A DNA stretch of 64,000 bases, from sequence record PQ287642.1; one strand, written 5' to 3'. How positions within the stretch are numbered: the first letter of the stretch is position 1; each line of letters starts with the position of its first letter. Positions 33,301 to 49,992 of this stretch are shown here, one piece after another. The position numbers and the translations under genes are program-made. The notes below the pieces were generated by a model. The model searched no databases, was not told the origin of the DNA, and saw nothing but the letters and a program-made list of their open reading frames with translations.

Positions 33301-33718
33301 AAGAACGAACGAACCAAGCATCACCAAATTCCCAACTATCGATGGGAGCAATGTTGGTTTCGAAATCGTCAAGAGTTACGGTACCTTTGATATTGGTAAC
33401 GGGACCCGGTTCACCAGGATTACCTTGCAGACCAGTATCACCTTTAGCGCCGTCTTCGCCTTTCAGCGATTCGAGCCACTCGGCTTCAGTACCAATAAAG
33501 CCAGCATCGAGTGCCAGCTGATAAGCGGATTTACCATCCGCGCCATCCTCACCTTTCATTCCCTCGATTTCGGTCGGGTCTTTGAAAGTTGTAGCCAGGC
33601 CAGCCCCGGTCGAAACCGGGATCTTGCCTGCAACTACCTCAAGAGGATTGTCTTCGGTGGAGATACGTTTTGGTAACTCACCGTTAACGAAAACTTCAAA
33701 TGCGGATTCACCAGCCAT
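30395..33718 (-). CDS. Collagen-like modular fibre protein (phiKZ gp146-like)
   Basis: Gly-X-Y runs (GDKGDKGDTGAK) alternate with eight ~55-aa globular modules. DGKxYARKDGxW repeats follow, then a C-terminal beta domain ending LLWDGSEW. Confidence 0.85.
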   Translation of the reverse strand: MAGESAFEVFVNGELPKRISTEDNPLEVVAGKIPVSTGAGLATTFKDPTEIEGMKGEDGADGKSAYQLALDAGFIGTEAEWLESLKGEDGAKGDTGLQGNPGEPGPVTNIKGTVTLDDFETNIAPIDSWEFGDAWFVRSSTATVLKVWSAPETGSPDAGQWIDSGDMRGPEGTGLVIRGQWPDNQELPPLAAKGDTYGWKNALYTFMLVAGEEDIFPDNYAYIQIVPMGPEGPKGDTGAKGDKGDRGLKGDTGAPGKDATPFTIKADLASEDDLPLAGDAKPEEAYSVMVDDVRHLFVFSVDENRWMDLGTWQGPKGEPGQDGIIGGEGPKGDKGDKGDKGDPGQDGIDGQDGAPGENLEILGTYPTMADLLAAGATLVIKKAYAVRDVNTLFYVATTPVTSEGDLINLGQFKGEKGDKGDKGDKGDTGAKGDKGDTGDGGKNLVVSGVLPDLTAIQAVPDPQEQEAWVAADNRHLYMFIDGAWVDLGTHTGAKGDKGDKGDKGDTGAKGDTGDKGDKGDQGENFEIIAVVDTVGEVPPATADNKGKAVVVKGGDVYVNISGTQFVSVGPIGQKGEQGDRGASMRIVGEVGSVEALPELVAGETDPADGEAYIVTVIQGDDTIKVIYVANRSTNTYDGPFNIQGPQGNDGPQGEVGPRGEIGQGIKIVGDYPSEAALTAAHPTSAIGDAYSVGPENSKELFVWAVDGADDTEKYLNLGSFTVGAKGEKGDKGDQGIVGPRGIQGAKGDKGSRWVILPNGVDIPNNTIGTQDDWCLDKSGKVWYRDATGWKEFIQLLDVPVAEVETADQNKKMVRYQLGWAPLLVDEVETPEEGEQYIRKGKADGTTEWAPLEVDAVPDVPTPNIALAMVRKDGEWKQGAPIVIANDVDKHYVLKGKASWVETDVFKDAASDGKSYARKDGAWAAVVPETTNDDKLYARKTTVAGVSSWVEVPAAIIASDAPDAKNYTRSNGEWKELVTIPEPGIDATKVWGRQTTAAGTSAWVEIKKEFDTYSLLSGAAPAGNFTITPANQQCYTVPSTAARTITLGDGPSGRMITAVLVLTGTVIPTFSGNFKWNDNTAPEAAATKTVITLLWDGSEWLGAKGAGY
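31470..33440 (-). repeat. Gly-X-Y collagen-type repeats (9-nt period) interspersed with globular modules
   Basis: Recurrent CCTTTATCG/CCTTTGTC/CCCTTATCG units on +, encoding GDK/GAK/GPK. Confidence 0.85.
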
Positions 33719-36186
33719 TATACAACTTCCTCAAGTTCGACGCGCATCAGACCGGATGTGTTAGATACAGCGTTAGCTGCGTCGCAGTTATACCAACTAT
33801 TGCTATTCTTGATGGTGTAAGTATTTACAGCATCAGCATCGTCAGCTTTATAGGTGAAGTTAAGAGAACCGCTAGCACCCTTAGACAGGTTAGTGCAGCG
33901 AAGTTTACCAGTCATAACTACATCTGTACCAATAGCACCTTCACGATTCGGGAAAGCAGCGATAGACATGGTACGAAGAACGAAGCCACCAAGGGTATAC
34001 TCGCCACCAGCTTTAAGGGTATTGACTGTAACGCCAGCCAGACCTTTGGCTACAACATCGGTAAAGTTGAAGATACCTTTAGCATCATCATCATGAACGA
34101 GCAGTGTGCGTGTCCATACTTTCTTAGCTGCATCACCCACCCAACCAGCAGAATCCCAGTTACCGCCAGGAGCAGTCATCACAGGGGCTTCAGCCAGCGA
34201 TTGAGTCGAAGTGATAGTGATGGTGTGACGCTGTACAACAGTACCTGCATTACCACCGGAGCGCAGACGAGTGGCAGGAGTGGTAACAGTCAGTTCAGGG
34301 GCACCGTTAGCAATCTTAACGATTGTCGATGCAGTAGACGAACTACCGTTAGCAGCACGTTGTGCAGTGATTGTCAGGTTATTAGTCAGGTCGTTGTAAT
34401 TACCAGTCAGGTAAGAAACAGTTTTGTTTGCTTCAATCTGAGTCGGGTTAGTTACAGTCAGCTGACCATTAGCCGAGGTGTAAGTAGCGCTAGTAGCGTT
34501 AGTTACAGTGTTAGCAACGGTTGCATCTTCACCAGCTTTAATGGCAGTTTGACCAGCCGGATAAGTTACAGCACCGAATGTAATCGTCGGTTTCAGGTTG
34601 TTCAGCTTGACAACGTTGACTTTCTCAGTAGTACCAGCTACGTCGGACTTATACCACGCGGAGAAACTACCGGAGGCTTTCTTAACGCGGATACTGAACG
34701 GTTGGTTAGTAGCAGTGTTACCACGGTCAGCAATAACCAGACCAGTCAGACTGTGAGTCTTACCAGCTGTCAGTGTACCATTGCGTGCTACGAATGCACC
34801 TTCATCACGAATCTCATAACCTACCACATCTTGGTCAGTGGTGAAAGTGATCGACATTGTGTCGCCTGCTTTCAGCTCGGTTTGAGAACCAGGATATTCA
34901 CCTGTAAATGTAGCCGCAATTACAACCGGCGCGGTATCCATGATTACATCAGTAGATGCCTTAGCACCATCTTCGTGAATAGCTTCGACCTTAATGGGAT
35001 CACTACCAACCGGCTCAGGCAGATTAATAGTTACTTCACCGGTCCACATCGGGGCATTTGCACCAGCGACGAGAGATACATCTACGCCGTTAACTTTAAC
35101 GACAGGACGATAGTTAGTATGACCGGTAATAGCAGCCACTTTAACTTTAACGTCACGAGTAGACGAAGAACATTGCACCAGAGAGAAACTATCCGCGGAC
35201 TTAACCTTCTCACCGACGTTATCAGCGGCATTAACCGGAGTGATATCAGTGATGAATACGCCACCATTTACACCTTTCGGTTCGGCAAGCGACAGGTTAA
35301 ATTCTTCTTCAGTACCAACGTATCCACCATCAACAGCGGATTCGTATGCGGACTTACCATTAGCGCCTTCTAGGCTTTCCAGCCATTGTTCTTCAGTACC
35401 AACGAAACCATTATCACGAGCGATCTGATAAGCAGACTTACCATCAGCTCCGTGTAGGCTTTCGAGATATTCTTCTTCAGTACCAACGAAACCGGCTGCT
35501 ACGGCTAGCTCGTAAGCAGATTTGCCGTCAGCGCCATCGATACCGTCATCACCTTTAGTACCGTCGATACCGTGGAGAGATTCCAGGTACTCAGCTTCGG
35601 TTCCAGTGAAACCAGCTTCGACAGCTAGATCGTAAGCGGACTTACCTTGATCACCCTGGTCGCCTTTGTCACCCTTATCACCTTTCTCGCCGGCATCGCC
35701 TTTGTCACCTTTTAGGGACTGGATGAACTCGGCCTCGGTACCGGTAAAACCAGTATCAAGAGCGGATTGATAGGCAGACTTACCGACGAGAGTTGCAAGG
35801 AATTCTTGTTCAGTGCCAGTGAAGCCGTTATCTACGGCAACTTCATAGATGGATTTACCTACAGCGCCATCTGCGCCGTCTTCACCTTTAAGAGAGGCGA
35901 GGAATTCGTCTTCAGTACCTACGAAGCCCTGTTGAAGAGCCAGCTGATAAATACCTTGACCTTTTAGACTTTCGAGCCACTCAGTTTCAGTGCCTACGAA
36001 ACCATTCTTTACCGCAACTTCATAAGCCGATAGGCCTTCATTGTTACGGATTTTAGAAACCATGAGACGGAAGTTCTTATAAGAACCATCTGCCTCAAGA
36101 CGGATAACTTCTACAAACTCTTCACCTGTGATGGTGTTAAGAGGCTGCATTCCGGAGATCATACCCGGACTGGATTTAATGGCCAT
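33718..36186 (-). CDS. Fibre/virion protein with GKSAY repeats and Ig-like domains (phiKZ gp145-like)
   Basis: Start revised to ATG 36186 (RBS AAAGGA). Eight GxSAY(E/Q)xAxxxGFxGTExExLxSLxG repeats, short collagen linkers, then T/V/A-rich Ig-like beta domains. TAATG coupling to the next gene. Confidence 0.8.
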   Translation of the reverse strand: MAIKSSPGMISGMQPLNTITGEEFVEVIRLEADGSYKNFRLMVSKIRNNEGLSAYEVAVKNGFVGTETEWLESLKGQGIYQLALQQGFVGTEDEFLASLKGEDGADGAVGKSIYEVAVDNGFTGTEQEFLATLVGKSAYQSALDTGFTGTEAEFIQSLKGDKGDAGEKGDKGDKGDQGDQGKSAYDLAVEAGFTGTEAEYLESLHGIDGTKGDDGIDGADGKSAYELAVAAGFVGTEEEYLESLHGADGKSAYQIARDNGFVGTEEQWLESLEGANGKSAYESAVDGGYVGTEEEFNLSLAEPKGVNGGVFITDITPVNAADNVGEKVKSADSFSLVQCSSSTRDVKVKVAAITGHTNYRPVVKVNGVDVSLVAGANAPMWTGEVTINLPEPVGSDPIKVEAIHEDGAKASTDVIMDTAPVVIAATFTGEYPGSQTELKAGDTMSITFTTDQDVVGYEIRDEGAFVARNGTLTAGKTHSLTGLVIADRGNTATNQPFSIRVKKASGSFSAWYKSDVAGTTEKVNVVKLNNLKPTITFGAVTYPAGQTAIKAGEDATVANTVTNATSATYTSANGQLTVTNPTQIEANKTVSYLTGNYNDLTNNLTITAQRAANGSSSTASTIVKIANGAPELTVTTPATRLRSGGNAGTVVQRHTITITSTQSLAEAPVMTAPGGNWDSAGWVGDAAKKVWTRTLLVHDDDAKGIFNFTDVVAKGLAGVTVNTLKAGGEYTLGGFVLRTMSIAAFPNREGAIGTDVVMTGKLRCTNLSKGASGSLNFTYKADDADAVNTYTIKNSNSWYNCDAANAVSNTSGLMRVELEEVV
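35290..36040 (-). repeat. Eight tandem ~21-26-aa GKSAY...GTEEEWLESLKG repeats
   Basis: Visible in the translation, and in DNA as recurring TTCAGTACC/AAGCAGA(C/T)TT units. Confidence 0.85.
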
Positions 36187-36279
36187 TACGTATTCCTTTG
36201 TTGGAGAGAGTCTTCGCAACTACTCGTGCACGTCTTAAAAGGAAAATAAGACTCATAGAGTAGTGTATTATTTTAGCAA

Positions 36280-38835: not shown

Positions 38836-38892
38836 TGTTAAACCCTCAATTGTGGTTTACAAAATTTACTTAACCCACATAGCATTATAAAA

Positions 38893-38914
38893 GCCCCTCC
38901 ACTTAAGGAGGGGC
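38893..38914 (-). terminator. GC hairpin after the holin-like gene
   Basis: GCCCCTCC-ACTTAA-GGAGGGGC, followed on - by TTTTAT. Confidence 0.65.
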
Positions 38915-38925
38915 TAATATTATTG

Positions 38926-39330
38926 TTACTGAGTAGAAATTACCATCTTAATGATTTCAATAAGACCCATACCTAAAGTTTTAAAGATATCGGCTACTTC
39001 TGAAGTCATTGGACCATCAGTGTTAATAACACTCATCACTACACCAGTGGACAGTATAGCTAACAAGGCACTTGCAGTTAAAATAGAACTGCGGTAAGTA
39101 TCACTAGCTCTAACACCAGTGTATTCTTTTTCGAGAAGCTTCGACTGCTTTTCAAGATCAGAAAGAGAATAGATCTCAGTTAATACTTCATCGGCAGTTG
39201 TATTCCCATTAACACGTGCACTACCATCTGCATGTAACATACCGTTCAAGTATGCTACGATTTGACGACAGTTAGGAGCTTTCGACAAAGGCTTATCGCC
39301 AAGGTCACTTAATATTTTTTCCAGAGTCAT
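38926..39330 (-). CDS. Putative holin-like membrane protein
   Basis: Start revised to ATG 39330 (RBS GGAGAG). Soluble N-terminal region, then two hydrophobic helices (ILTASALLAILSTGVVMSVI; IFKTLGMGLIEIIKMVIS). Lies between the spanins and the endolysin. Confidence 0.5.
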   Translation of the reverse strand: MTLEKILSDLGDKPLSKAPNCRQIVAYLNGMLHADGSARVNGNTTADEVLTEIYSLSDLEKQSKLLEKEYTGVRASDTYRSSILTASALLAILSTGVVMSVINTDGPMTSEVADIFKTLGMGLIEIIKMVISTQ

Positions 39331-40635: not shown

Positions 40636-41532
40636 TTATACGAACTTAGCTACGTTTACTGCCTTGTCGCCAAGAGTAGGCTCAACGCCACCAATATCGA
40701 AGGTCAGATTAAGACCATTCGAGTTATAACCGATTGGATGGTTAGTAGCGATATGCACGTTAACTTGACAAGCGATTACTTCGAGATATTGGAACGATCC
40801 ACCGGTACCAGCTGGTGCGTCAACCTTACGGTCAACACCAGAGCAAAGACCAATCTCGGAAATAATCGGAGAGCGGGTCGAGGCAGTACGGATTCGATGC
40901 GCATTGGTGATCTCGATAATATCTTCAGCAGACAAACTTACCTTAACAATTGCACTAGCCGAGATATTAACGTTAGAACCGATAACTGTACCGTTGTTCG
41001 AAATAGCTGGCGGTACTGGGTTAAGATCATCAACAGTTGGTGTGTACGGTTTCGGTGTTGGAATACCATTAATTACTTCGATTTCCAGAAGCTGTGGTTG
41101 TACACCTGTAACGTTAATGCGCATTCCATAATAGGCAACGTAGTTTTTACCATTATGTTTTTCCGGAACACGTAAGCAGAACCGATCCCGTTGTGCGGCT
41201 GGAAGATCATCGGTTACTTCACGCAGTGCAAACGGAATATGGTTATAAAGTGCAGCATGGTTAGAACGGTGAATACGGTTTTCTACTTCATCGGAGCCAT
41301 CAGCGGCTTTGATTGTGTAGTGACCCATGTTACCAATTACCATATAACGCACGTTCGGAATTTCACCCGCTGCTGGAGTTACGCCATTTTGTACACCGAA
41401 CTTCTCATTCAGAGTTGTATGTGCAATCACACGGAACGGAGATAGACCGAGATATTTTGTAGTTTGCAGATAAGATGCATAGCACGTACGTACTACGTTG
41501 ATAATCTGCTGATCGATAGGGTTACTAGCCAT
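40636..41532 (-). CDS. Conserved virion/baseplate protein (phiKZ gp139-like)
   Basis: [33 protein letters not shown] and FDIGGVEP. Conserved position upstream of ruvC. Confidence 0.68.
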
Positions 41533-41589
41533 TCTTTTAATCCTTGACTTAGAAAGTTCATTGTACCATTGTGTAAGAATTTTTGGCTT

Positions 41590-41612
41590 GCCTCCCGTTA
41601 GGGAGGTTTATG
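41590..41612 (-). terminator. Stem-loop with TATG arm ending the tail-fibre/oxygenase operon
   Basis: GCCTCCC-GTTA-GGGAGGT-T-TATG, 3 nt after the stop at 41616. Confidence 0.62.
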
Positions 41613-41615
41613 CCG

Positions 41616-42104
41616 TTAGGTGTACTGTTGGAAGTCACCACGTATCATTACACATGCCCACAACTGACCATGGTCGGATTTAGGAATCGCGTGAACTGTA
41701 CTAAGGTTAAAGGCGATCTGTTCACCTTTACGAAGTTCGATCAAACGTCCATTAAGTTGAATGGCTTGTCTATCTTTTAATGCAGTTGCAACGATGGTAC
41801 CTGCACCAGTTTTATTGACCCACGTTGTCATCTGATCGAGGAAACCACGACCAGCTGGAATATCTAGGAACCAACCTTGAACAGCTTTATTTTGGATATC
41901 TTCACTAAAACCAACCTTGAAGATATCTCGTTGTTTAGATGTCCAATCAAACCACTTAGAATAGTTGTAAATACTCAGTGCTTTGGTTTTGTTCTTACCG
42001 ATACGGCAACGAGAGCCATACGAGTCTTTGTATTTAACCTTACGAGAGAGGTCTACTAAAGTAGTTACTTCCTCTTCGGTAAGGGGGTCGTAATGTTTAT
42101 ACAT
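41616..42104 (-). CDS. Degenerate 2OG-Fe(II)/cupin (DSBH) fold protein
   Basis: GFLDQM occupies the HxD position without His. GEQIAFNLSTVHAI keeps the distal His strand. Same size and pattern as the adjacent oxygenase. Confidence 0.5.
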   Translation of the reverse strand: MYKHYDPLTEEEVTTLVDLSRKVKYKDSYGSRCRIGKNKTKALSIYNYSKWFDWTSKQRDIFKVGFSEDIQNKAVQGWFLDIPAGRGFLDQMTTWVNKTGAGTIVATALKDRQAIQLNGRLIELRKGEQIAFNLSTVHAIPKSDHGQLWACVMIRGDFQQYT

Positions 42105-42111
42105 ATCTGTC

Positions 42112-42669
42112 CTACTCGTAGAGATAGATGAGAACGAAGCGTAGGTGTTTTACGGGTGGTACAGAATGCGGTGGTGTTTTAGCTGGAAAGATTACTGCTC
42201 TTCCAGGAACATCTGGGATGAACTCACCATTTAGGTCGAGTCCATCTCCATTATCACACAATGCAATCACCATATTAAATCGATACATTGCAATGTCGAT
42301 ATGCTCCGGCATACCAAAACCAACCTCGTACATATTGACACATGCTTCTTTGGGTTTTATCCCATTGATAGTTGGTGCAATTTCAAACAGATAATCGCTA
42401 AGTTCTTTTGGCATCTGACCATTACCAAGGAACCAGTAGTTTGCTTCCACTGTACCCTTGGTAGGGATACTATTTATCTTCTTGCGATTGTACCATCTTG
42501 CACGAGGTAGCGCTTTTAAGTACTCCACCAGTCTTTCACTAACTGGTTGCGAAAACACGACCGCCTTCGATGTTTCTTGGGCCAATGAGTTCATGGAGAC
42601 CGCCTTCGAAGGTAGCAGCTCGATCTTCGGCTTCTTGCTCATTGGTAATGTATTCGTAGTTGGGATCAT
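42112..42669 (-). CDS. 2OG-Fe(II)-dependent dioxygenase (AlkB/prolyl-hydroxylase-like); true start probably internal
   Basis: CVNMY, HxD (PEHID), G..VIFP, distal His (PPHSV) and Arg (LRFVL) form the full metal/2OG-binding set. The first 130 nt overlap the upstream gene. Confidence 0.8.
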   Translation of the reverse strand: MIPTTNTLPMSKKPKIELLPSKAVSMNSLAQETSKAVVFSQPVSERLVEYLKALPRARWYNRKKINSIPTKGTVEANYWFLGNGQMPKELSDYLFEIAPTINGIKPKEACVNMYEVGFGMPEHIDIAMYRFNMVIALCDNGDGLDLNGEFIPDVPGRAVIFPAKTPPHSVPPVKHLRFVLIYLYE

Positions 42670-43135
42670 TCTGATAGAACTCTTTGTGATTTCGACTAGT
42701 ATCTTTACAGAGTTTGATATAGTCTAGCATCTCACTAAGTTCAGTAAGTTCAAGACCGGTCTTCTCTGCAAGAGCCACGATTGCACGCCCAAGCACGTTT
42801 ACTTGTTCTACGACAGGATAACGTTGAGTGATCTTGTAAGCCATCTGGTTGTCCAGCTGTGCTTCATAGATCAGACGAGGACCTTCGTTCTCTCCAAGAA
42901 TAGAGTAGTTCTTTTCCCAGGTTCCATCGTCATTGATGGTGAGGTCACCGACAACTCGGTCACCATTAAACAGATCCATGTTGTCTTCAACATAGATCAC
43001 GTTTGGGTTATCTGGATCGCATTGATCGATAGTCATCGAAGTAGCAACGATGAACTTACCATTCAGACGGTTAAAACAAAGGACAACAGGTTTACGACCC
43101 TTTTCAGGTTCTGGTACATTATGAAAATCGAACAT
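42539..43135 (-). CDS. Putative tail-fibre assembly/chaperone-like protein
   Basis: 198-aa ORF directly after the fibre genes, with helical YKITQRYPVVEQVN...EMLDYI. Function inferred from position. Confidence 0.45.
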   Translation of the reverse strand: MFDFHNVPEPEKGRKPVVLCFNRLNGKFIVATSMTIDQCDPDNPNVIYVEDNMDLFNGDRVVGDLTINDDGTWEKNYSILGENEGPRLIYEAQLDNQMAYKITQRYPVVEQVNVLGRAIVALAEKTGLELTELSEMLDYIKLCKDTSRNHKEFYQNDPNYEYITNEQEAEDRAATFEGGLHELIGPRNIEGGRVFATS

Positions 43136-43147
43136 GTGTAATTTCCT

Positions 43148-44512
43148 TTAGACGATTCGAGTGAGACTACTACCGTTACGGCGCATTACAACCATTGTTG
43201 GCATTTTGCGACCATTGTTGAAGTCCAGCAAGTATTGAGCAAATCCATAACCACCATCAGCAATCTGCGAGATATTTGCCTGGAGAGCACTGATTGCAGC
43301 TTGAGCGCTAGCATAACGTCCACCAGCATAATAGTGCCCACGTGCATTAGCATTATAAGTCGCAAATAGATCACGGAAGTGAACGATTTGTCCATTACCC
43401 ATAATGCAGTAGTCAGACGGGATATTTGGACGACCTTGAGGATCAGTTCCAGTAGGAGGCCATGGAGTTGGGAAAGTCGTAACGAATTGCTTTAATTCAA
43501 AGCGAGTGATATTCCAAACGTTACTAGCATCTAGGTCAACTCGTGCAGGGAAATACAATTGTTCCCAACCAACCCCAGCCAACCGTTTAGATGTAAATGC
43601 GCGTTGTGTACGGTGAAGCCGTTGTGCATAAATAGCATCGATTTCAGCTTTACTGTACAAGTTCATGATCGCCAGTGTTAACCCATGAGGGTTATTTTGA
43701 TTACGAATGTGATCTGTAATCTTTGGAATCAAAATGGATTGGATCAGATTGAAAATACCACCAATCGGCATATACACATTGGTTAGGCTAGTATCTGTTG
43801 TCTGAGCTTTTGTAGCCATTGGCCAGTTGTTAATTTGCCCAAGCTTAATCTTTACCTTATCCGAAGAGTGCGGATTATTTTCATCGGTTATGTGAGCGTT
43901 CACACGGTTGATATAATTCTGCACGTCGTCTTTCGCAAGCTGAACGTAATATTTGTAATAATCCGTACCAGCCGCTAGAATTGCAGTTCGACCCACTGCC
44001 CATGCATCACCTAAACGGTTAATATTGACAACCGTGGATTCAAGACCATACAACTGCCAATATTTGTGCATGTGTTCTGATGGAGTATATGCAGTTGGTT
44101 TACCGATGATTTCTTCCCAAGTAAACTTAAGATTAGTCTCATCTATCTTCTCCATTAGTGCTTTAAGTTCTTTTACAGAAACACTAAAGAATCCACCTAC
44201 TGCATGATATTCCGCACGAACGACTGGTGTGACGGAGGCGTTGATGATAACAACGAGACCCATCACATTTTGACCAGTCATTTCAGAAAGCTTTTCGTAG
44301 TGATACGTTAGAACATAGTCTTTACCACGCACAAGAGCTTTACCAGTAGAGTCCCTCAGTACAAAGCCATTCGTATAGAAACCGCCATGGGTACAAACGA
44401 ATACGCGATGCTTCTTACCAGGAACTTGAATTAGAGTGTGTTCCTCACCTTTAATCCAGTTATCTGGATCTTCACCGGTAAGGTCAAGCTCAAGAAAAGT
44501 AATATCGTTCAT
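43148..44512 (-). CDS. Tail fibre/baseplate protein, gp131-135 family (gp135-like)
   Basis: Family N-terminus LDLTGEDPDNWIKGEEH, KPTAYTPSEHMH..WQLYG, and HITDENNPH / HIRNQNNPH repeats. Confidence 0.8.
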   Translation of the reverse strand: MNDITFLELDLTGEDPDNWIKGEEHTLIQVPGKKHRVFVCTHGGFYTNGFVLRDSTGKALVRGKDYVLTYHYEKLSEMTGQNVMGLVVIINASVTPVVRAEYHAVGGFFSVSVKELKALMEKIDETNLKFTWEEIIGKPTAYTPSEHMHKYWQLYGLESTVVNINRLGDAWAVGRTAILAAGTDYYKYYVQLAKDDVQNYINRVNAHITDENNPHSSDKVKIKLGQINNWPMATKAQTTDTSLTNVYMPIGGIFNLIQSILIPKITDHIRNQNNPHGLTLAIMNLYSKAEIDAIYAQRLHRTQRAFTSKRLAGVGWEQLYFPARVDLDASNVWNITRFELKQFVTTFPTPWPPTGTDPQGRPNIPSDYCIMGNGQIVHFRDLFATYNANARGHYYAGGRYASAQAAISALQANISQIADGGYGFAQYLLDFNNGRKMPTMVVMRRNGSSLTRIV

Positions 44513-45919
44513 TTATACCTTCCAGGAATTTAACGATGTATTAAATACAGCGAAACCAACGGAGTTAATATACGTTGTGATTGCACCGTTACCAGTACCG
44601 ATACCCCAGCCACCAAGATAACGGAAGATGGCCGTTGTACCAGCAGGGTGGTTCCTACCTAGCACGTTGTTCAACTGAGCTTCAGCGTTTGCACCGTTAG
44701 GATCAAATGACCCTGCCGCATAAATAACGCTCTTTGGTTTATCGATCCATGCTGTTTGGATATCGATCCAATGAAGCCAGCTTGCTGCATCAGCAGAAGC
44801 AGGAACAAGGAACGCGTAGTTGTTAGCAGGTGGAATAGCCCCACTTGCAAAAGTTTGCGGTGGCAGCAAACCAGTCTTCAGCTGTCCAAGGATTTCATCC
44901 TGACGAGTGAACTCGTAAAGCTCTTGGAAAGTCATGCCATTGCTAGTCGTATTGTTGTTGGCATCTTTAACGCCACCAATACGTTCGGTACTGTTAACGG
45001 TTTCACCACGGTTGTAATAGTTCCCAGCAACTTGCTGATGTTCTTGAACGGTATACGTACCAAGTTTAGCAGCTGTCTCTTTGTGTGGGTTATTACGGTC
45101 ATCAACGTGCGCCTGTAGAATCGGTAAGAAGTTCTTGTCGATACTTTGCTTAGCTCGTAATGGCGTAGCGTAACGATCCAGAATATCCCCGTTAGCTGCT
45201 TCAGCTTGATCTTTCGTAGCAATAGCAGCATTCTTCACTTTATCCAGCTGAACTTTAGCGGCAGTGAGTTTGTGCGGGTTATTACGATCGTTAATGTGGG
45301 TAGTAAGACGTTGCTCAATGGAAGTAAGTTCATCTCCAACTAAAGCAAGCTCGGCTTTATATTGGTCAAACAAAGCATCCATGTCTTTCTTTACGAACTT
45401 TTCACCGGCGGCAGTAATTCGCTTAAGTAGTAATACTTGAGGCGTAAACCCGTAAAGTTCCCACAACGCATGTAGGTGACCGTTGGGTTTGTAATCATCC
45501 GGTTTACCAGTAATATTGTTCCAATGAATCTTCCGAGTATTGTTGATCAACCCGAGTGCTTGGTTAGCGATTGCTTTACCAAGATTACAGTAAACACCAC
45601 CGACCATCTGGGCATCAACCCTGATCTCATGGTGAACCCGTGGGTTCTTAATGACAATAACTGCAAAAGCTGGAATGCCAGTCTTCTTAGTAATCTCTGG
45701 ATGCATCTGAGTGCATTGGAAATCGTCCTTCTCTTTTAACACATAGCCACGACCATCGATCATGTGCAGATTGTTATTGTAGAAGTAACCTTTATCCAGA
45801 ACAATCACCCGATATGGCAGACCAGCTTGATCTGCCAAGTTGTGGTATTCTCCACGCGTGCGGTTATTGAAACAAGTGCCCGTCCCATCGTAGGGAAGAG
45901 CGTGAAGTAATGGGTTCAT
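44513..45919 (-). CDS. Tail fibre/baseplate protein, gp131-135 family (gp134-like)
   Basis: YDGTG..FNN...EYH, KPDDYKPNGHLH.LWELYG, and HINDRNNPH / HVDDRNNPH repeats. Confidence 0.8.
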   Translation of the reverse strand: MNPLLHALPYDGTGTCFNNRTRGEYHNLADQAGLPYRVIVLDKGYFYNNNLHMIDGRGYVLKEKDDFQCTQMHPEITKKTGIPAFAVIVIKNPRVHHEIRVDAQMVGGVYCNLGKAIANQALGLINNTRKIHWNNITGKPDDYKPNGHLHALWELYGFTPQVLLLKRITAAGEKFVKKDMDALFDQYKAELALVGDELTSIEQRLTTHINDRNNPHKLTAAKVQLDKVKNAAIATKDQAEAANGDILDRYATPLRAKQSIDKNFLPILQAHVDDRNNPHKETAAKLGTYTVQEHQQVAGNYYNRGETVNSTERIGGVKDANNNTTSNGMTFQELYEFTRQDEILGQLKTGLLPPQTFASGAIPPANNYAFLVPASADAASWLHWIDIQTAWIDKPKSVIYAAGSFDPNGANAEAQLNNVLGRNHPAGTTAIFRYLGGWGIGTGNGAITTYINSVGFAVFNTSLNSWKV

Positions 45920-45929
45920 GTTGATTCCT

Positions 45930-47297
45930 TTAGATTGGTACCCAACCTTGACCTGGGATATTCATAGAAGCGTAAAGAATGTCATATACACCGTTCCATG
46001 CACCGTTACCAGAACCCCATGCCTTAGTCTCGCGAATGTAATAGAAAACAATACTATTCAAACGCATGTTAGAGAACGGCGGTGTTGTAGCAACCATTGC
46101 GTTGGCTTGCGCCTGAGTGATATTGACACTGAAAGATGCGAATGCAACATCTCCACTGCCACCTTGAGGAAGAAGAGATAGCAGGGCATCAATGTTAGTC
46201 CAGTTCCGATTGTTATCGAGAACAGCACGATTATTCAGAACACCACGACCTAATCGACCAAGAGGAAGCTTGCCTTGATCATAGTTAGTAAAAGCGTTTG
46301 CAGGAATGTCTTTACGATACAACTGTAGAATTTTGTTATACGTCATATCCTGGTTTAACCAAAATCCGAGGTTAGAGTTTTCAACAACTTCATTTCTCAG
46401 ATACTTGGTATTAGCCAGAGTATTTACTTCTTGCTTGCTATTGGTATTCAACTGTGCATTAGTGACGCCATGAACGTTGCCACGTGCATCGATGTGGGCC
46501 TGTAGTGGATCTCCACCGATCTTATTTACTTCCGCAGCCGAAAGCTGTGGGGTAAGATAGAGTTCGTTCGATATACCTGCTGTAACCTCTGCAAGACTCG
46601 CTACGCGGTAGTTTTCTACAAGACCTAAACCTACATGTTCTTTTGTGTCGACGTGTGGGTTTTCTTTATCTTGAATGTGTAGATCGAGGCGATTATTGAA
46701 ACGTTGTAAGAAACGATCATATTCAGCTTTTACATCAACACGGAACTCTGCTTCTGTATTACCAAGTTGGCCAGTGATTGCCCGAGAGATATTCTCAATC
46801 TCGTTGTTAAACGGCTGATATGTATCCAAGCGCCAGCGTAGGGCAGCTAACTCGCCAGGACCATAAATCGGCTCAGTGCCGTTATAATCAAGCCATTTAG
46901 GAATATAGTCAGAAGGCTTAGTTTTCCAGAAGTTTACATAATCGTCGATGACTGTGAAACTAAATGCAACATCGCCGCCTACCATCTGCGCCGACATGTA
47001 AATCTTACCGGTACGAGTACGATCCAAGAAAACAATACCACTGGCAATATCAAGGCCATAGAACTCGCTGGCTTGCTTATGGTAATACGTGACGATATAA
47101 TCTTTATCACGAATTAAAGGAACGTAACGAGAGTCATATACACGGAGGCTATTAACATAGAAACCACCGTGATACATGGTTACCATTTTAAAAGGGAACC
47201 CCGAGATAGGGGTAAGAGTTGCTTCTTCGCTACCTACCAGGTTATTCGGATCACGTCCGGTCTTATCTAACGGTAGTTGTACGATTACATCGGACAT
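45930..47297 (-). CDS. Tail fibre/baseplate protein, gp131-135 family
   Basis: LDKTGRDPNNLVGSEE, and HIQDKENPH / HIDARGNVH repeats with VGLGLVENY. Confidence 0.8.
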   Translation of the reverse strand: MSDVIVQLPLDKTGRDPNNLVGSEEATLTPISGFPFKMVTMYHGGFYVNSLRVYDSRYVPLIRDKDYIVTYYHKQASEFYGLDIASGIVFLDRTRTGKIYMSAQMVGGDVAFSFTVIDDYVNFWKTKPSDYIPKWLDYNGTEPIYGPGELAALRWRLDTYQPFNNEIENISRAITGQLGNTEAEFRVDVKAEYDRFLQRFNNRLDLHIQDKENPHVDTKEHVGLGLVENYRVASLAEVTAGISNELYLTPQLSAAEVNKIGGDPLQAHIDARGNVHGVTNAQLNTNSKQEVNTLANTKYLRNEVVENSNLGFWLNQDMTYNKILQLYRKDIPANAFTNYDQGKLPLGRLGRGVLNNRAVLDNNRNWTNIDALLSLLPQGGSGDVAFASFSVNITQAQANAMVATTPPFSNMRLNSIVFYYIRETKAWGSGNGAWNGVYDILYASMNIPGQGWVPI

Positions 47298-47315: not shown

Positions 47316-47356
47316 ACAAAAGACGGAACCACCGTGCTTTTACACACAGTGATTCC
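47316..47356 (-). terminator. Long G.U-containing stem followed by a U-tract inside the tail operon
   Basis: On -: GGAATCACTGTG-TGTAAAAG-CACGGTGGTTCC-GTCTTTTGT. The pairing works via G.U only on the minus strand. Confidence 0.5.
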
Positions 47357-47374
47357 ATCCGTTGCCAGGGTAGG

Positions 47375-47698
47375 TTACAAACGATCGTAAGCGTCGTTAA
47401 ACACTTTCTCTATCGCTTTGAAGATATTCTCCTCAGCGTAGTTGTCTACCCGTTTAGGTGTCATGAACGAAGAGTTATTCGTTCCACCTTTAGCTTGTGC
47501 TTGCTGTGCCGGTAGCCAGTCAGGGACATTACCCAAACCAATATCTCTAGGCTCAAGTCCATGAACGTTACCTTTTTCAAGGATGTGTGCGTTCATACGA
47601 TCCCGAGCACTACGGAGTAGGTTGAGAATGATGTTATTAAACTGACCGATATTGCCTTTCAGCTTATCGAGTTCGACACGAAATACTGTCATAGCCAT
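47375..47698 (-). CDS. Short gp131-family paralogue (single HxxxxGNVH module; gp132-like)
   Basis: HILEKGNVHGLEPRDIGLGNVPDW and FMTPKRV match the repeat unit in 47710-49992. Confidence 0.75.
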   Translation of the reverse strand: MAMTVFRVELDKLKGNIGQFNNIILNLLRSARDRMNAHILEKGNVHGLEPRDIGLGNVPDWLPAQQAQAKGGTNNSSFMTPKRVDNYAEENIFKAIEKVFNDAYDRL

Positions 47699-47709: not shown

Positions 47710-49992
47710 TTAGGGTGCGACAATAGTCGTCCCATCATTCCAGATGAGAGCATTGGTCGGAGAATCACCCCAGAATTCGGTATAACCAAGATTGTTTACT
47801 GTAACAGTGAAACCTTTACCAGCAGCCGCACTATAGAAAGGTGCTGACCCGTAAGGAATTTCTAACTGTCCATTCTCGTTGGAACCGAACATAGCGATGT
47901 CTGTATCCATATTCTCAAGGCTAGATGGATCACGTCGAATCTGAACGGCGTGGTGTCCATAGTTACCAGAGATAGAACTCACATCGGTTAGGGTGTTTGC
48001 TTTGACCAAACGATTATCTTTCGCTGACCAAACATCGAGAGTAGAAGTGACTTCAGTCAATTTAAATGTAGGCGTATATGTAATCTCATACACACGGATT
48101 CGACTAGCATTTCCATTAGTGGTATTACCACCTTGGAATACTAGATACTTGGAACCAATCCGGATATCGGAGATTTCCCAGCCGCCAGTCAATTGAGCAG
48201 CGATTACAGGCGTAGCAGCAGAAACCCAATCACTAGCACCTATTGCTGTATAAGTCGGGTCACCAGACGGTGGGGACTTTTCAACAATTGCCATTTGACG
48301 AGAATCCGCTTCTTCGGTTGCTACCCACATTTCGGTTACATTGTCAGACTCGGCGTACAGTTGAGTTACTGTACCTCCGGCGATCTTCATGATCTTACCT
48401 TCATCTGCACCGTCACTTGGTTTTAGTTGAACATATAGAGCAGTTTTAGAGCCCCACATAGCAACCATCGCATTTGCCTGGTTGAAGCCAGCACCAGCAG
48501 CCCAACCAGCAGGAATTGCTAGTTTAGCAGAACCGGCTGAACGGATACCATCGCCCTGTGACCAAGTACCGGACTGGAAGTCACGTATGGCTGGAACTAG
48601 ATGATAATCTGCATCCTGTAGGCTTAACCAAGACCAAGCTGCACCACGGATTGGAGTGATCGGATATGCATCGGCACCCGCTGGTTCAGAGCGATAAACT
48701 GTATCACCCGAACCATTGAATAACGCATATGCTGCTGCACCGGCGAGAACACCTTGAATCTTACTCAGACGTTCTTTATCTTGCTCGTCTGGAGGAGTCG
48801 GGTCATTGAAACTGATATCTGCCGAAGAAGCAATACCTTCTCCGATCTTCTCAGTCACTTCTGCCATGATGCCATTAATATCGCTGTTGAGCGGGAACTT
48901 AGCTTCCCATTCCTCAGGAGTTTCCCCACCAAAGGTAGTCGCATCACCACCACTTCCACCAGCCGCAATCTTCTGATCAATTTCCTGTTTGGTATATGTA
49001 CCAATTAAACCAGGGGTGATATTGTGCGGGTTGGTATCAGTAAGGTGTTTATTGAAATCAATAATTAATTGATCCAGACGTGGGTCACCTTGAACTGCTT
49101 GGATAAGCAAAGACACCGTATACGGAGTCATCAAGGTACTATTGTTAGTCGGGTCAACTGCCTGTTGTGGTGTTGCAGCCGGATAGTTAGGAACGTTACC
49201 TAAACCAATGTCACGTGGTACCATTCCATGAACGTTACCCGTGGCGGCAATGTGTGCATTAAGAGGCTTGAGTGCGTTTTCTTGGATGGACAACAGTACA
49301 CCACGAGGGTTCGTAAACAGGTCGTTACGATTACCATCTTTGTGCTGTTGGTCTGTTGCCATAGAGAAGTTGGGCACATTACCAAGCTGGATTTGCACCT
49401 TGTTAACACGGTGCGGGTTATCATAGTCTCTTAAGTGCGACTCGGTTGTACCGGAAGCGGTAGCCTCCATGATATCACCAAGACGTTGAAGAGAAGCATT
49501 AATCTCTTCAGAACCCACAAGACTATCGATCGGTTGATCATGATCGAGTGGCGGGAACGAGGCAGGGAGTACATCAATATTACCCCATGCACGAATCAGC
49601 GGGTTGTACTGTCGACGAGACAGTTCCGCCAGAATGGCTTGGTCGCTAAAGCCCCACTGCCCACCGATGGTCCGATAATCAAGACGAGCTTGACCGGCGA
49701 TAGAGCGTTTCATGAAGCGGATAGAACCAGCGATCGGTCGACCAATAGAATCCATTGCTTCGATGAAACGGTGACCGATCATGTAGTCGACGCCTTCTAC
49801 AAACAGAGCACCGGTCTGGTTGTTCCGTACTTTTAGAGAGTCGACAAAGAAAGGAGCCGCTTTCGGAATAATGAAATAATAATCGGTAGGGCCGGGTACT
49901 TGCAGGGTTTGGATTTCCCCTGTGATGAGGTTAGCTGGGTTAGTGCCATGCAAATCCTCGTCATATAGACCGGTTGTACTAACGGTGGACAT
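47710..49992 (-). CDS. Tail tip/baseplate protein (phiKZ gp131-like) with C-terminal beta-propeller
   Basis: DLHGTNPANLITGE N-terminus and three HxxDxxNPH-type repeats. The C-terminal beta-rich region ends in an RCC1-like unit (FGSNENGQL...AAAGKGFTVTVNNLG...FWG). Confidence 0.82.
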   Translation of the reverse strand: MSTVSTTGLYDEDLHGTNPANLITGEIQTLQVPGPTDYYFIIPKAAPFFVDSLKVRNNQTGALFVEGVDYMIGHRFIEAMDSIGRPIAGSIRFMKRSIAGQARLDYRTIGGQWGFSDQAILAELSRRQYNPLIRAWGNIDVLPASFPPLDHDQPIDSLVGSEEINASLQRLGDIMEATASGTTESHLRDYDNPHRVNKVQIQLGNVPNFSMATDQQHKDGNRNDLFTNPRGVLLSIQENALKPLNAHIAATGNVHGMVPRDIGLGNVPNYPAATPQQAVDPTNNSTLMTPYTVSLLIQAVQGDPRLDQLIIDFNKHLTDTNPHNITPGLIGTYTKQEIDQKIAAGGSGGDATTFGGETPEEWEAKFPLNSDINGIMAEVTEKIGEGIASSADISFNDPTPPDEQDKERLSKIQGVLAGAAAYALFNGSGDTVYRSEPAGADAYPITPIRGAAWSWLSLQDADYHLVPAIRDFQSGTWSQGDGIRSAGSAKLAIPAGWAAGAGFNQANAMVAMWGSKTALYVQLKPSDGADEGKIMKIAGGTVTQLYAESDNVTEMWVATEEADSRQMAIVEKSPPSGDPTYTAIGASDWVSAATPVIAAQLTGGWEISDIRIGSKYLVFQGGNTTNGNASRIRVYEITYTPTFKLTEVTSTLDVWSAKDNRLVKANTLTDVSSISGNYGHHAVQIRRDPSSLENMDTDIAMFGSNENGQLEIPYGSAPFYSAAAGKGFTVTVNNLGYTEFWGDSPTNALIWNDGTTIVAP

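What the first reader, a model, noticed from the sequence alone, without database searches (positions are those of the whole stretch)
41616..43135. Active plus degenerate 2OG-Fe(II) oxygenase at the end of the tail-fibre operon: a possible virion-fibre hydroxylation system
Seen: 42112-42669 has the full dioxygenase set (NxY, HxD, distal His, Arg). Its neighbour 41616-42104 looks like the same fold with the HxD His lost. Both follow the five gp131-family tail genes and a chaperone-like ORF on one strand, closed by a hairpin at 41590. The same genome encodes collagen-like fibres whose Gly-X-Y runs are mostly Gly-Asp-Lys, with Lys in the Y position. Established: 2OG oxygenases hydroxylate Y-position Pro/Lys in collagen, and giant eukaryotic viruses encode such enzymes (PBCV-1 prolyl 4-hydroxylase, mimivirus lysyl hydroxylase). 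Inference: this may be an enzyme plus inactive partner that post-translationally modifies tail fibres, affecting stability, receptor range or glycosylation. An AlkB-type nucleic-acid repair role is the main alternative.
Basis: partly seen in the sequence, partly recalled or inferred. Interest (0 to 1): 0.75.

Follow-up and report, generated by a model that had tools for sequence, protein, structure and literature searches.

The report
Phage tail-fibre oxygenase maturation cassette
Behind the tail-fibre genes of this giant Pseudomonas phage sits a three-gene set (a helical protein, a working iron/2-oxoglutarate oxygenase and its catalytically dead twin); the same set follows fibre genes in several unrelated kinds of phage, so it most likely helps to mature the fibre tip, possibly by hydroxylating it, which has not been described for a phage fibre in the papers I could search.

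Summary
The window is a phiKZ-like Pseudomonas jumbo phage (100% identical to HHBS36_1). ORF2 (true start 42594, 160 aa; PHIKZ137 homologue) is a 2OG/Fe(II) oxygenase. NxY, HxD, the distal His and the Arg stay invariant down to 25% identity. ORF1 (PHIKZ138 homologue) is its paralogue (hhalign 98%, confident AF2 double-stranded beta-helix). It has lost NxY, HxD and the Arg. ORF3 (PHIKZ136 homologue) belongs to the same unit.

New here: the triplet keeps this order in all 31 loci with upstream context, and in four of seven distant metagenomic loci. These include phiKZ-like, T4-like, Mu-like and P2-like baseplate regions. It usually sits directly behind a tail-fibre gene ending in one shared ~65-aa C-terminal domain ("FibC"). 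In the window, gp133-like and gp134-like carry it.

Phage QdP_Psa3 has the cassette but no gp146-type collagen-like gene. An AlkB-type role is unlikely from context, though the N-terminal motif is AlkB-like. Published phiKZ TnSeq shows insertions tolerated in gp137 but none in gp136 or gp138.

Best reading: a fibre-tip maturation module, with two non-catalytic factors plus an accessory hydroxylase. Catalysis and substrate are untested.

The parts
41616..42104 (-). ORF1, 162 aa, PHIKZ138 homologue: a catalytically dead double-stranded beta-helix paralogue of ORF2 (pseudo-oxygenase)
   Evidence: phrog_14616 E 1e-68. AF2 pLDDT 90.7. Foldseek PHD2/P4H E 2.5e-6. hhalign to the oxygenase family 98.2%. 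NxY, HxD and Arg absent.
42112..42594 (-). ORF2, 160 aa, PHIKZ137 homologue: 2OG/Fe(II) oxygenase with a complete active-site set (N87xY89, H98xD100, H143, R152). The mechanical ORF runs up to 42669.
   Evidence: Pfam PF13640 E 1.5e-4, below its threshold. AF2 pLDDT 91.4. Foldseek results. Invariant residues. Start and ribosome-binding site.
42539..43135 (-). ORF3, 198 aa, PHIKZ136 homologue: first gene of the cassette. It has a conserved FN(K/R)xxG motif near the N-terminus and a C-terminal EGGLHExxGPR motif. Its fold is unknown; it is a putative fibre assembly factor.
   Evidence: phrog_13209 E 4e-62. Homologues precede the oxygenase in QdP_Psa3 (E 3e-12) and Milchi (E 3e-19) and in distant loci (HMM E 1e-30 to 1e-34). 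Alignment A4.
43148..44512 (-). gp135-like fibre-base protein, directly upstream of the cassette. Its C-terminus was not detected as FibC.
   Evidence: phiKZ cryo-EM atlas, PMC13250141.
44513..45919 (-). gp134-like fibre protein. The FibC tip domain is encoded at 44516-44740.
   Evidence: FibC HMM E 7e-16. jackhmmer. Alignment A5.
45930..47297 (-). gp133-like fibre protein. The FibC tip domain is encoded at 45933-46157.
   Evidence: FibC HMM E 3e-15. jackhmmer. Alignment A5.
47375..47698 (-). gp132-like small paralogue of the gp131 family
   Evidence: BLASTP to gp131-like E 4e-17. Annotation.
47710..49992 (-). gp131-like tail fibre/tip protein, first gene of the paralogous run
   Evidence: BLASTP. 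Annotation.
41591..41606 (-). Short G+C-rich hairpin 10 nt after the ORF1 stop codon. No T-run follows it.
   Evidence: Conserved in phiKZ only.

Best explanation
ORF3, ORF2 and ORF1 (homologues of phiKZ gp136, gp137 and gp138) form one conserved accessory cassette for tail fibres that end in a particular ~65-residue C-terminal tip domain. I call this domain FibC here. Its motif is a hydrophobic strand ending in F or Y, then G-x-G-N-G, then a terminal W.

The cassette proteins are not reported as virion parts. They most likely act in the cell during fibre assembly.

Proposed mechanism. The gp136-like protein and the dead double-stranded beta-helix protein (ORF1) bind the fibre C-terminus as non-catalytic assembly factors. 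ORF1 would use the former active-site cleft as a peptide-binding groove. ORF2 is the active paralogue. It would use Fe(II), 2-oxoglutarate and O2 to hydroxylate a side chain of the same client protein, tuning tip stability or receptor binding.

Shown here:
- the fold and the intact catalytic residues of ORF2;
- the loss of those residues in ORF1;
- the paralogy of ORF1 and ORF2;
- conserved gene order and fibre adjacency in most sampled lineages;
- the shared FibC domain.

Inferred: physical complex formation, the fibre as substrate, hydroxylation as the chemistry, and the residue modified.
For: Active enzyme:
- NxY, HxD, H and R are invariant from 99% down to 25% identity.
- The AF2 model is confident, and Foldseek matches hydroxylase folds.

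Dead twin:
- hhalign gives 98.2% probability.
- The ORF2 model superposes on the PhiPA3 gp138 homologue at TM 0.74.

Cassette and fibre linkage:
- The order gp136-gp137-gp138 is found in all 31 loci that include the upstream region.
- Both DSBH genes occur, adjacent, in the same 72 of 50,697 phage records.
- The same arrangement follows a fibre gene in QdP_Psa3 (115 kb), T4-like Milchi, and IMG/VR contigs L027 and L029.
- It also does so in Mu-like (L038), T4-like (L041) and P2-like (L044) baseplate regions, and in L040.

Shared tip domain:
- jackhmmer from the QdP_Psa3 fibre C-terminus finds gp133-like and gp134-like C-termini and the fibres upstream of the cassette in the other lineages.
- The FibC HMM hits only cassette-linked fibres among 1070 ORFs, which include the whole QdP_Psa3 genome.
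- L038, L040 and L041 are linked to each other.
- The upstream proteins match tail-fibre PHROGs through other regions of their sequence.

Genes are coupled: the 56-nt ORF3/ORF2 overlap recurs in phiKZ and QdP_Psa3.

Not structural: gp136-138 are not flagged as structural in the phiKZ record and do not appear in the text of the cryo-EM atlas (PMC13250141). They are listed in SEC-MS source data from infected cells (PMC10449902).

Genetics in phiKZ (PMC12676376 Table S2): gp131-136, gp138 and gp139 have 0 insertions, while gp137 has 577 reads at 2 sites. This fits essential non-catalytic factors plus a dispensable enzyme.

One 947-bp contig (L043) has the gp136-like gene directly followed by the pseudo-oxygenase gene, with no oxygenase between them.
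Against: - No biochemical data exist. Neither the substrate nor any +16 Da modification is known.
- The gene directly upstream in the window (gp135-like) has no detectable FibC domain.
- The link between the two FibC groups rests on one weak HMM hit (L038, E 1e-3 to 1e-2). The L044 fibre was not detected at all.
- The nearly invariant Asn-Gly of FibC could be a purely structural beta-turn.
- The enzyme tolerates insertions in phiKZ, so any modification is not required for plaque formation on PAO1. The zero counts for gp136 and gp138 could also reflect polar effects or small gene size.
- ORF2 scores below Pfam thresholds. Its N-terminal motif is most similar to AlkB homologues (ALKBH8, E 1.6e-5).
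- One short contig (L046) has the order pseudo-oxygenase then oxygenase, with no gp136-like gene seen.
Confidence: 0.5

Rival explanations
1. Collagen hydroxylase. ORF2 hydroxylates Y-position Lys or Pro in the Gly-X-Y runs of the collagen-like fibre at 30395-33718 (gp146 homologue), as the PBCV-1 and mimivirus enzymes do for collagen-like substrates.
For: - The collagen-like protein is real and rich in Gly-Asp-Lys.
- phiKZ gp146 is also collagen-like.
- The ORF2 fold matches PBCV-1 vCPH and human LH3 among many other structures.
Against: - The cassette is separated from the collagen-like gene by about ten genes.
- QdP_Psa3 carries the cassette, but its complete genome has no multi-run collagen-like ORF. 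The only long Gly-X-Y run lies antisense to an annotated gene.
- Fibres next to the cassette in L003, L004, L027 and L029 have no Gly-X-Y runs of five or more triplets.
- The first 50 kb of Milchi has none either.
- The Foldseek matches do not discriminate between hydroxylase subfamilies.
Confidence: 0.1
2. AlkB-type nucleic-acid repair or modification enzyme. Its position behind the fibre genes would be incidental.
For: - The profile of the family hits ALKBH8 at E 1.6e-5, and ALKBH5, ALKBH2 and AlkB weakly, through the NxY...HxD half.
- 5 of 31 homologues touch Pfam PF13532.
- AlkB structures appear in the Foldseek list.
- Databases label the family 'DNA endonuclease'.
Against: - Position in the baseplate/fibre module is conserved in most sampled lineages, never among replication genes.
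- It is almost always paired with a dead paralogue and a gp136-like protein.
- 24 of 31 homologues prefer PF13640, the P4H type.
- The His-to-Arg spacing is 9, and the protein ends ...RFVLIYLYE with a single Arg. The AlkB RxNxTxR motif, as I recall it, is absent.
- At 160 aa there is little room for a nucleotide-recognition lid.
- No nuclease motif or family match supports the database label.
Confidence: 0.07
3. A fibre assembly cassette in which the oxygenase acts on something other than the fibre. Candidates are the conserved C-terminal EGGLHExxGPR tail of the gp136-like protein, a host envelope component, or a small molecule. Alternatively it is mainly a structural chaperone subunit whose catalysis is marginal.
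For: - gp136 homologues keep a striking C-terminal motif, with G178 and E182 invariant across four lineages.
- gp137 is dispensable in phiKZ TnSeq while gp136 and gp138 have no insertions.
- Contig L043 lacks an oxygenase between the gp136-like and pseudo-oxygenase genes.
Against: - Strict invariance of every catalytic residue across 7 lineages argues for selected catalysis.
- Nothing in the sequence points to a specific non-fibre substrate.
- Co-transfer with the FibC domain is the only consistent context signal.
Confidence: 0.2

Closest known systems
Prolyl-4-hydroxylase / PHD / PKHD-type 2OG oxygenases (Pfam PF13640; e.g. Pseudomonas putida PPHD 4j25/4iw3, PBCV-1 vCPH 5c5t, 3dkq, 6n1f)
   Same: - Double-stranded beta-helix fold, HxD...H triad, and an Arg nine residues after the distal His.
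- Best Pfam family for 24 of 31 homologues.
- Foldseek E 1e-6 to 1e-5, TM 0.60-0.67.
- Full-length profile hit to 6n1f, E 0.016.
   Different: - Scores stay below the Pfam gathering threshold (23 versus 27 bits).
- Only 160 aa, with no substrate-binding extension.
- An NxY motif of AlkB flavour.
- Always encoded beside a dead paralogue and behind a phage fibre gene.
- Substrate unknown.
AlkB family dioxygenases (PF13532; ALKBH8 3thp, AlkB)
   Same: The N-terminal half motif I-N-x-Y-x-x-G-x-x-h-P-x-H-x-D aligns with ALKBH8 at E 1.6e-5.
   Different: The C-terminal half is not AlkB-like: one Arg only, at spacing 9. There is no lid region. The genomic context is fibre assembly, not DNA metabolism.
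Tpa1 / Ofd1 / OGFOD1: an active DSBH followed by an inactive DSBH (from my own knowledge of the literature; not tested here)
   Same: An active 2OG oxygenase is permanently paired with a degenerate copy of the same fold that lacks the metal ligands and is thought to serve in partner binding.
   Different: There the two folds are fused in one chain and act on ribosomal protein uS12. Here they are separate adjacent genes in phages, together with a third, helical protein.
Collagen P3H1-CRTAP-cyclophilin B complex, and collagen P4H alpha2-beta2 with PDI (from my own knowledge)
   Same: This is a working analogy. A hydroxylase plus a non-catalytic relative plus a chaperone act as one complex that both modifies and helps fold a trimeric fibrous client.
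   Different: No sequence relationship beyond the oxygenase superfamily. The client here is not collagen-like. Complex formation is not shown.
Phage tail-fibre assembly factors encoded just downstream of fibre genes (T4 gp38/gp57A; lambda and Mu Tfa, Pfam Caudo_TAP)
   Same: Position immediately after the gene for the fibre tip, absence from reported virion parts, and co-transfer with the tip domain.
   Different: No Caudo_TAP or any other Pfam family matches ORF3 at a credible level (the Pfam scans of ORF3 and its homologues found nothing meaningful). Two of the three proteins have an oxygenase fold, and one keeps a complete active site.

Membership tests
2OG/Fe(II) oxygenase superfamily (for ORF2) | Double-stranded beta-helix fold | tested here: met
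   AF2 pLDDT 91.4. Foldseek probability 1.0 to many 2OG oxygenases, E down to 7e-7.
2OG/Fe(II) oxygenase superfamily (for ORF2) | HxD/E...H iron-binding triad, plus a basic residue that binds the 2OG C5 carboxylate | tested here: met
   H98, D100, H143 and R152 are invariant in A1 and A6.
2OG/Fe(II) oxygenase superfamily (for ORF2) | Score above the curated Pfam threshold for a 2OG-FeII_Oxy family | tested here: not met
   PF13640 scores 22.7-23.1 bits against a cut-off of 27. PF13532 scores 12 bits against 31. This is a divergent member recognised by structure and motifs.
2OG/Fe(II) oxygenase superfamily (for ORF2) | Fe(II)- and 2OG-dependent turnover | not testable with these tools
   Needs an enzyme assay.
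2OG/Fe(II) oxygenase superfamily (for ORF1) | Double-stranded beta-helix fold and homology to an oxygenase family | tested here: met
   AF2 pLDDT 90.7. Foldseek PHD2/P4H E 2.5e-6. hhalign 98.2% to the ORF2 family.
2OG/Fe(II) oxygenase superfamily (for ORF1) | HxD/E...H triad and 2OG-binding Arg | tested here: not met
   In the hhalign register, HxD falls on M92-T93-T94 and the Arg on Gln147. In no register is a His present. Only His138 is kept, and it is not invariant in the wider family. ORF1 is therefore filed as a pseudo-enzyme.
AlkB family | C-terminal RxNxTxR-type motif with two Arg, and a nucleotide-recognition lid (features as I recall them) | tested here: not met
   The sequence ends H143-x8-R152-FVLIYLYE with one Arg. 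The whole protein is 160 aa.
AlkB family | N-terminal NxY...HxD block similar to AlkB homologues | tested here: met
   ALKBH8 at E 1.6e-5 over profile positions 66-113.
Collagen prolyl/lysyl hydroxylases | Co-occurrence with a collagen-like (Gly-X-Y) substrate | tested here: not met
   Present in this phage and in phiKZ. Absent from the complete QdP_Psa3 genome and from the cassette-adjacent fibres of the other lineages scanned.
Collagen prolyl/lysyl hydroxylases | Hydroxylation of Y-position Pro or Lys | not testable with these tools
   Needs mass spectrometry or an assay.
Tail-fibre assembly chaperones (Caudo_TAP / Tfa, gp38, gp57A), for ORF3 | Sequence membership in a known chaperone family | tested here: not met
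   No Pfam, NCBIfam or PDB-sequence match. The PHROG family has unknown function.
Tail-fibre assembly chaperones (Caudo_TAP / Tfa, gp38, gp57A), for ORF3 | Encoded directly downstream of the fibre-tip gene, and not a virion component | tested here: met
   Gene order in most sampled lineages. Not flagged as structural in the phiKZ record and not mentioned in the text of the cryo-EM atlas.

The most novel reading that the evidence does not exclude
The cassette would be the first dedicated post-translational hydroxylation system for a bacteriophage receptor-binding fibre.

A pseudo-oxygenase and a helical partner would hold the FibC tip. An O2-, Fe- and 2OG-dependent paralogue would hydroxylate it.

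Virion adsorption properties would then depend on the oxygen, iron and metabolic state of the infected Pseudomonas cell.

The whole four-gene module (tip domain plus three helper genes) would move horizontally between unrelated myoviruses as a host-range unit.
Probability: 0.3. Interest if true: 0.8.

Novelty: new variant of a known kind. Interest (0 to 1): 0.65.

Why it matters
Tail-fibre tips decide which bacteria a phage can infect. Their accessory genes are needed whenever fibres are swapped or engineered.

This work defines a mobile four-part module that I did not find described in the papers searched. It consists of the FibC tip, a gp136-like protein, an oxygenase and a dead oxygenase. 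It is present in the model phage phiKZ and its relatives, which are used in therapy research, and in several other myovirus types.

It gives a testable function to three 'hypothetical' genes. Databases currently mislabel one of them 'DNA endonuclease'.

If hydroxylation is confirmed, it would add a new class of virion modification in phages. It would also be a clear case of an enzyme/pseudo-enzyme pair acting in virus assembly.

The experiment is directly feasible. phiKZ insertion mutants in gp137 were recovered in the published pooled TnSeq library.

Tried and rejected
- **Pairwise and narrow-profile comparison of ORF1 and ORF2.** BLASTP and a narrow profile comparison (probability 1.3%) showed nothing. 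Homology appeared only with broader alignments.
- **Sequence searches against PDB.** Single-sequence and narrow-profile searches gave only weak or spurious hits, such as a Sel1 repeat protein and Rab6.
- **ORF3 and FibC.** No Pfam, NCBIfam or PDB match was found for either.
- **Literature.** Searches for gp136-138 by name found no main-text mention. Searches for phage oxygenase/tail-fibre links found nothing relevant. Supplements with transcription start and stop sites for phiKZ and 201phi2-1 are not held. Expression timing therefore could not be checked.
- **Possible promoter between the gp138 and gp139 homologues.** A conserved CTTACA-type motif there is not enriched in the window (9 matches found, 8.7 expected), so I dropped it.
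- **Searching for FibC alone.** tblastn with a single FibC sequence, and a word-based search with the Milchi fibre, found only near-identical relatives. Whether FibC fibres exist without the cassette is still open.
- **Milchi.** The rest of the genome (50-175 kb) was not scanned for collagen-like genes.
Full report
**What the window is**

Bases 41000-44000 are 100% identical to Pseudomonas phage HHBS36_1. They are 99.6-99.8% identical to phiHQ, BRkr, PA1C, PS119XW and phiLBG22, all ~300-kb phiKZ-like jumbo phages. In those records, and in phiKZ itself, the three genes of the finding correspond to PHIKZ138 (ORF1, 41616-42104), PHIKZ137 (ORF2) and PHIKZ136 (ORF3, 42539-43135). They follow homologues of gp131-135 on the minus strand.

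**Checking the observation: ORF2**

- The mechanical ORF is 42112-42669. The homologues are nearly all about 160 aa.
- The ATG at 42594 has a GAAGG ribosome-binding site, and two annotations use it. ORF2 is therefore 42112-42594 and overlaps ORF3 by 56 nt.
- Pfam finds only a sub-threshold match to 2OG-FeII_Oxy_3 (E 1.5e-4, 23 bits against a cut-off of 27).
- N87-x-Y89, H98-x-D100, H143 and R152 are invariant in 31 close homologues. They stay invariant in a 21-sequence alignment of seven lineages, down to 25% identity.
- The AlphaFold2 model is confident (pLDDT 91.4). It matches PolD, 3dkq, P. putida prolyl hydroxylase, PHD enzymes, PBCV-1 vCPH, LH3, AspH, ALKBH6 and AlkB at E 7e-7 to 1e-4.
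- ORF2 is thus a small but complete 2OG/Fe(II) oxygenase.
- The database name 'DNA endonuclease' (phrog_2297) has no support in any result here.

**Checking the observation: ORF1**

- ORF1 has no detectable pairwise similarity to ORF2. Narrow profiles also fail.
- Its model (pLDDT 90.7) is a double-stranded beta-helix that matches PHD2, P4H and 3dkq (E 2.5e-6).
- The ORF2 model superposes on the PhiPA3 homologue of ORF1 at TM 0.74.
- Broad profiles align at 98.2% probability, E 6e-14, over 151 columns.
- In that alignment the distal His is kept (H143 aligns with H138). The Arg is Gln147. The NxY and HxD positions carry non-liganding, unconserved residues.
- A wider family alignment never shows an HxD.
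- ORF1 is therefore an ancient, catalytically dead paralogue.
- Its family is small: 93 representatives at E <= 1e-3 among 1.84 billion.

- The five upstream genes are true paralogues.
- The hairpin at 41591-41606 is real (dG -14.9, z -3.96). It lacks a T-run and is conserved in phiKZ only. The strand continues with more genes, so an operon end is not shown.
- The collagen-like fibre at 30395-33718 is real. It has 79 Gly-X-Y triplets, GDK 15 times, and Lys in the Y position in 30 of 79.

**What the surroundings show**

Cultured phages:
- Both double-stranded beta-helix (DSBH) genes occur in exactly the same 72 of 50,697 phage records. All are Pseudomonas phages, and the two genes are adjacent in each.
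- A very distant family member retrieves the same 72 records.
- These include phages that are not phiKZ-like: QdP_Psa3 (115 kb), and Milchi and Astolliot (174 kb, T4-like layout).
- In QdP_Psa3 and Milchi a homologue of ORF3 (BLASTP E 3e-12 and 3e-19) again precedes the oxygenase and pseudo-oxygenase. The triplet again follows a tail-fibre gene.

Fetched loci:
- All 31 loci that include the upstream region have the order gp136-gp137-gp138 behind a fibre-like gene.

Distant metagenomic relatives of ORF1:
- The same arrangement sits in a Mu-like baseplate region (L038), between T4-type gp7 and gp8 genes (L041/L042), in a P2-like region (L044), and in L040. The oxygenase motifs are intact in each.
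- Exceptions are short contigs. L043 has the gp136-like gene directly followed by the pseudo-oxygenase gene. L046 has the order pseudo-oxygenase then oxygenase.

**The shared fibre tip**

- The fibre genes in front of the cassette differ in their N-terminal and central parts, which match various tail-fibre PHROGs. They end in a common ~65-residue domain that I call FibC.
- jackhmmer from the last 80 residues of the QdP_Psa3 fibre collects the C-termini of gp133-like and gp134-like proteins of the phiKZ-like loci. It also collects the upstream fibres of Milchi, L027 and L029: 56 hits in 31 loci.
- An HMM of these hits only the cassette-linked fibres among 1070 ORFs. That set includes the window, the complete QdP_Psa3 genome and part of Milchi.
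- L038 is a weak hit. It links to L040 and L041 by its own search.
- The alignment shows a nearly invariant Asn in a G-x-G-N-G loop and an invariant terminal Trp.
- No Pfam or PDB relative was found.
- The window's gp135-like C-terminus and the L044 fibre were not detected.

**Experimental data from papers**

- The phiKZ cryo-EM atlas places gp131 (three copies), gp133, gp134 and gp135 in the fibre base. Its text does not mention gp136-138 (PMC13250141).
- SEC-MS source data list all three proteins in infected cells (PMC10449902).
- In phiKZ TnSeq (PMC12676376 Table S2), gp131-136, gp138, gp139 and gp140 have no insertions. gp137 has 577 reads at 2 sites. In the untrimmed table gp137 has 604 reads at 8 sites.
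- This count is similar to other small genes that tolerate insertions in the same table, for example PHIKZ040.

**Interpretation**

- The cassette is a fibre-tip accessory module.
- The two non-catalytic proteins look like the core of it. The intact enzyme is an accessory that is under strong selection across lineages yet dispensable on PAO1 in the laboratory.
- The most economical mechanism is hydroxylation of the fibre client while it is held by the dead paralogue and the gp136-like protein.
- Complex formation, the substrate, the residue modified and the chemistry are all inferred.

**Rivals**

- *Collagen-like gp146 as substrate.* This is weakened because QdP_Psa3 has the cassette without such a gene, and the neighbouring fibres in four other lineages lack Gly-X-Y runs.
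- *AlkB-type role.* The NxY...HxD half is most similar to ALKBH8 (E 1.6e-5). However, the C-terminal half, the Pfam preference (24 versus 5 of 31 homologues) and above all the context argue against it.
- *A non-fibre substrate.* One candidate is the conserved EGGLHExxGPR tail of gp136. This remains possible.

**Novelty**

- The proteins belong to a known superfamily, and viral protein hydroxylases are known from giant eukaryotic viruses.
- An enzyme/pseudo-enzyme/helical-protein cassette tied to a phage fibre-tip domain was not found in the searched literature.
- I rate it a new variant of a known kind, with interest 0.65.

Noticed in passing
window 30395-33718 (-) and 33721-36219 (-): The collagen-like gp146 homologue also has a weak, sub-threshold Fibritin_C match near residue 903-926. 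The neighbouring gp145 homologue carries two short Gly-X-Y runs (8 and 6 triplets), yet it is annotated 'tail sheath' in HHBS36_1. That label is probably wrong. A paper on 201phi2-1 reports a spontaneous in-frame deletion in the homologous repeat protein gp230.
   Followed up: partly
window 42112-42594 (-) and homologues in 72 phage records: The PHIKZ137 family is widely annotated 'DNA endonuclease' through phrog_2297 and phrog_274. Every result here says 2OG/Fe(II) oxygenase. Only phage Churi labels it so.
   Followed up: yes
window 47321-47360 (-) and 38892-38915 (both strands): There is a long terminator-like hairpin (17 pairs) between the gp132-like and gp133-like genes. A perfect bidirectional terminator-like hairpin lies after the gene that ends at 38926. 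Either could define transcription units within the tail-gene run.
   Followed up: no
window 41545-41585 (-); L005 10010-10030; L010, L012, L026 intergenic regions: A CTTACA-containing motif (AATCTTACAATG-like) is conserved between the gp138 and gp139 homologues of several phiKZ-like phages. It is not enriched elsewhere in the window.
   Followed up: partly
window 40636-41532 (-): The next gene is a DUF7208 protein (Pfam E 5e-112), the PHIKZ139 homologue. It has no insertions in phiKZ TnSeq and is called a virion protein in the PA1C record. It is not part of the cassette in other lineages.
   Followed up: partly
L035 19247-19612 (+), QdP_Psa3: A run of 12 Gly-X-Y triplets lies in the frame antisense to annotated CDS0110. 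It is most likely a by-product of a repeat in the sense gene rather than a collagen-like gene.
   Followed up: no
L043 (947-bp contig) and L046 (3.3-kb contig): These are variants of the cassette. In one, the gp136-like gene is directly followed by the pseudo-oxygenase gene with no oxygenase between them. In the other, the order is pseudo-oxygenase then oxygenase, with no gp136-like gene seen.
   Followed up: partly
window 42539-42594; L005 9001-9050; L003 7995-8029: The 3' end of the gp136-like gene, which encodes the conserved EGGLHExxGPR tail, overlaps the start of the oxygenase gene by 35-56 nt in three lineages. This suggests translational coupling.
   Followed up: partly
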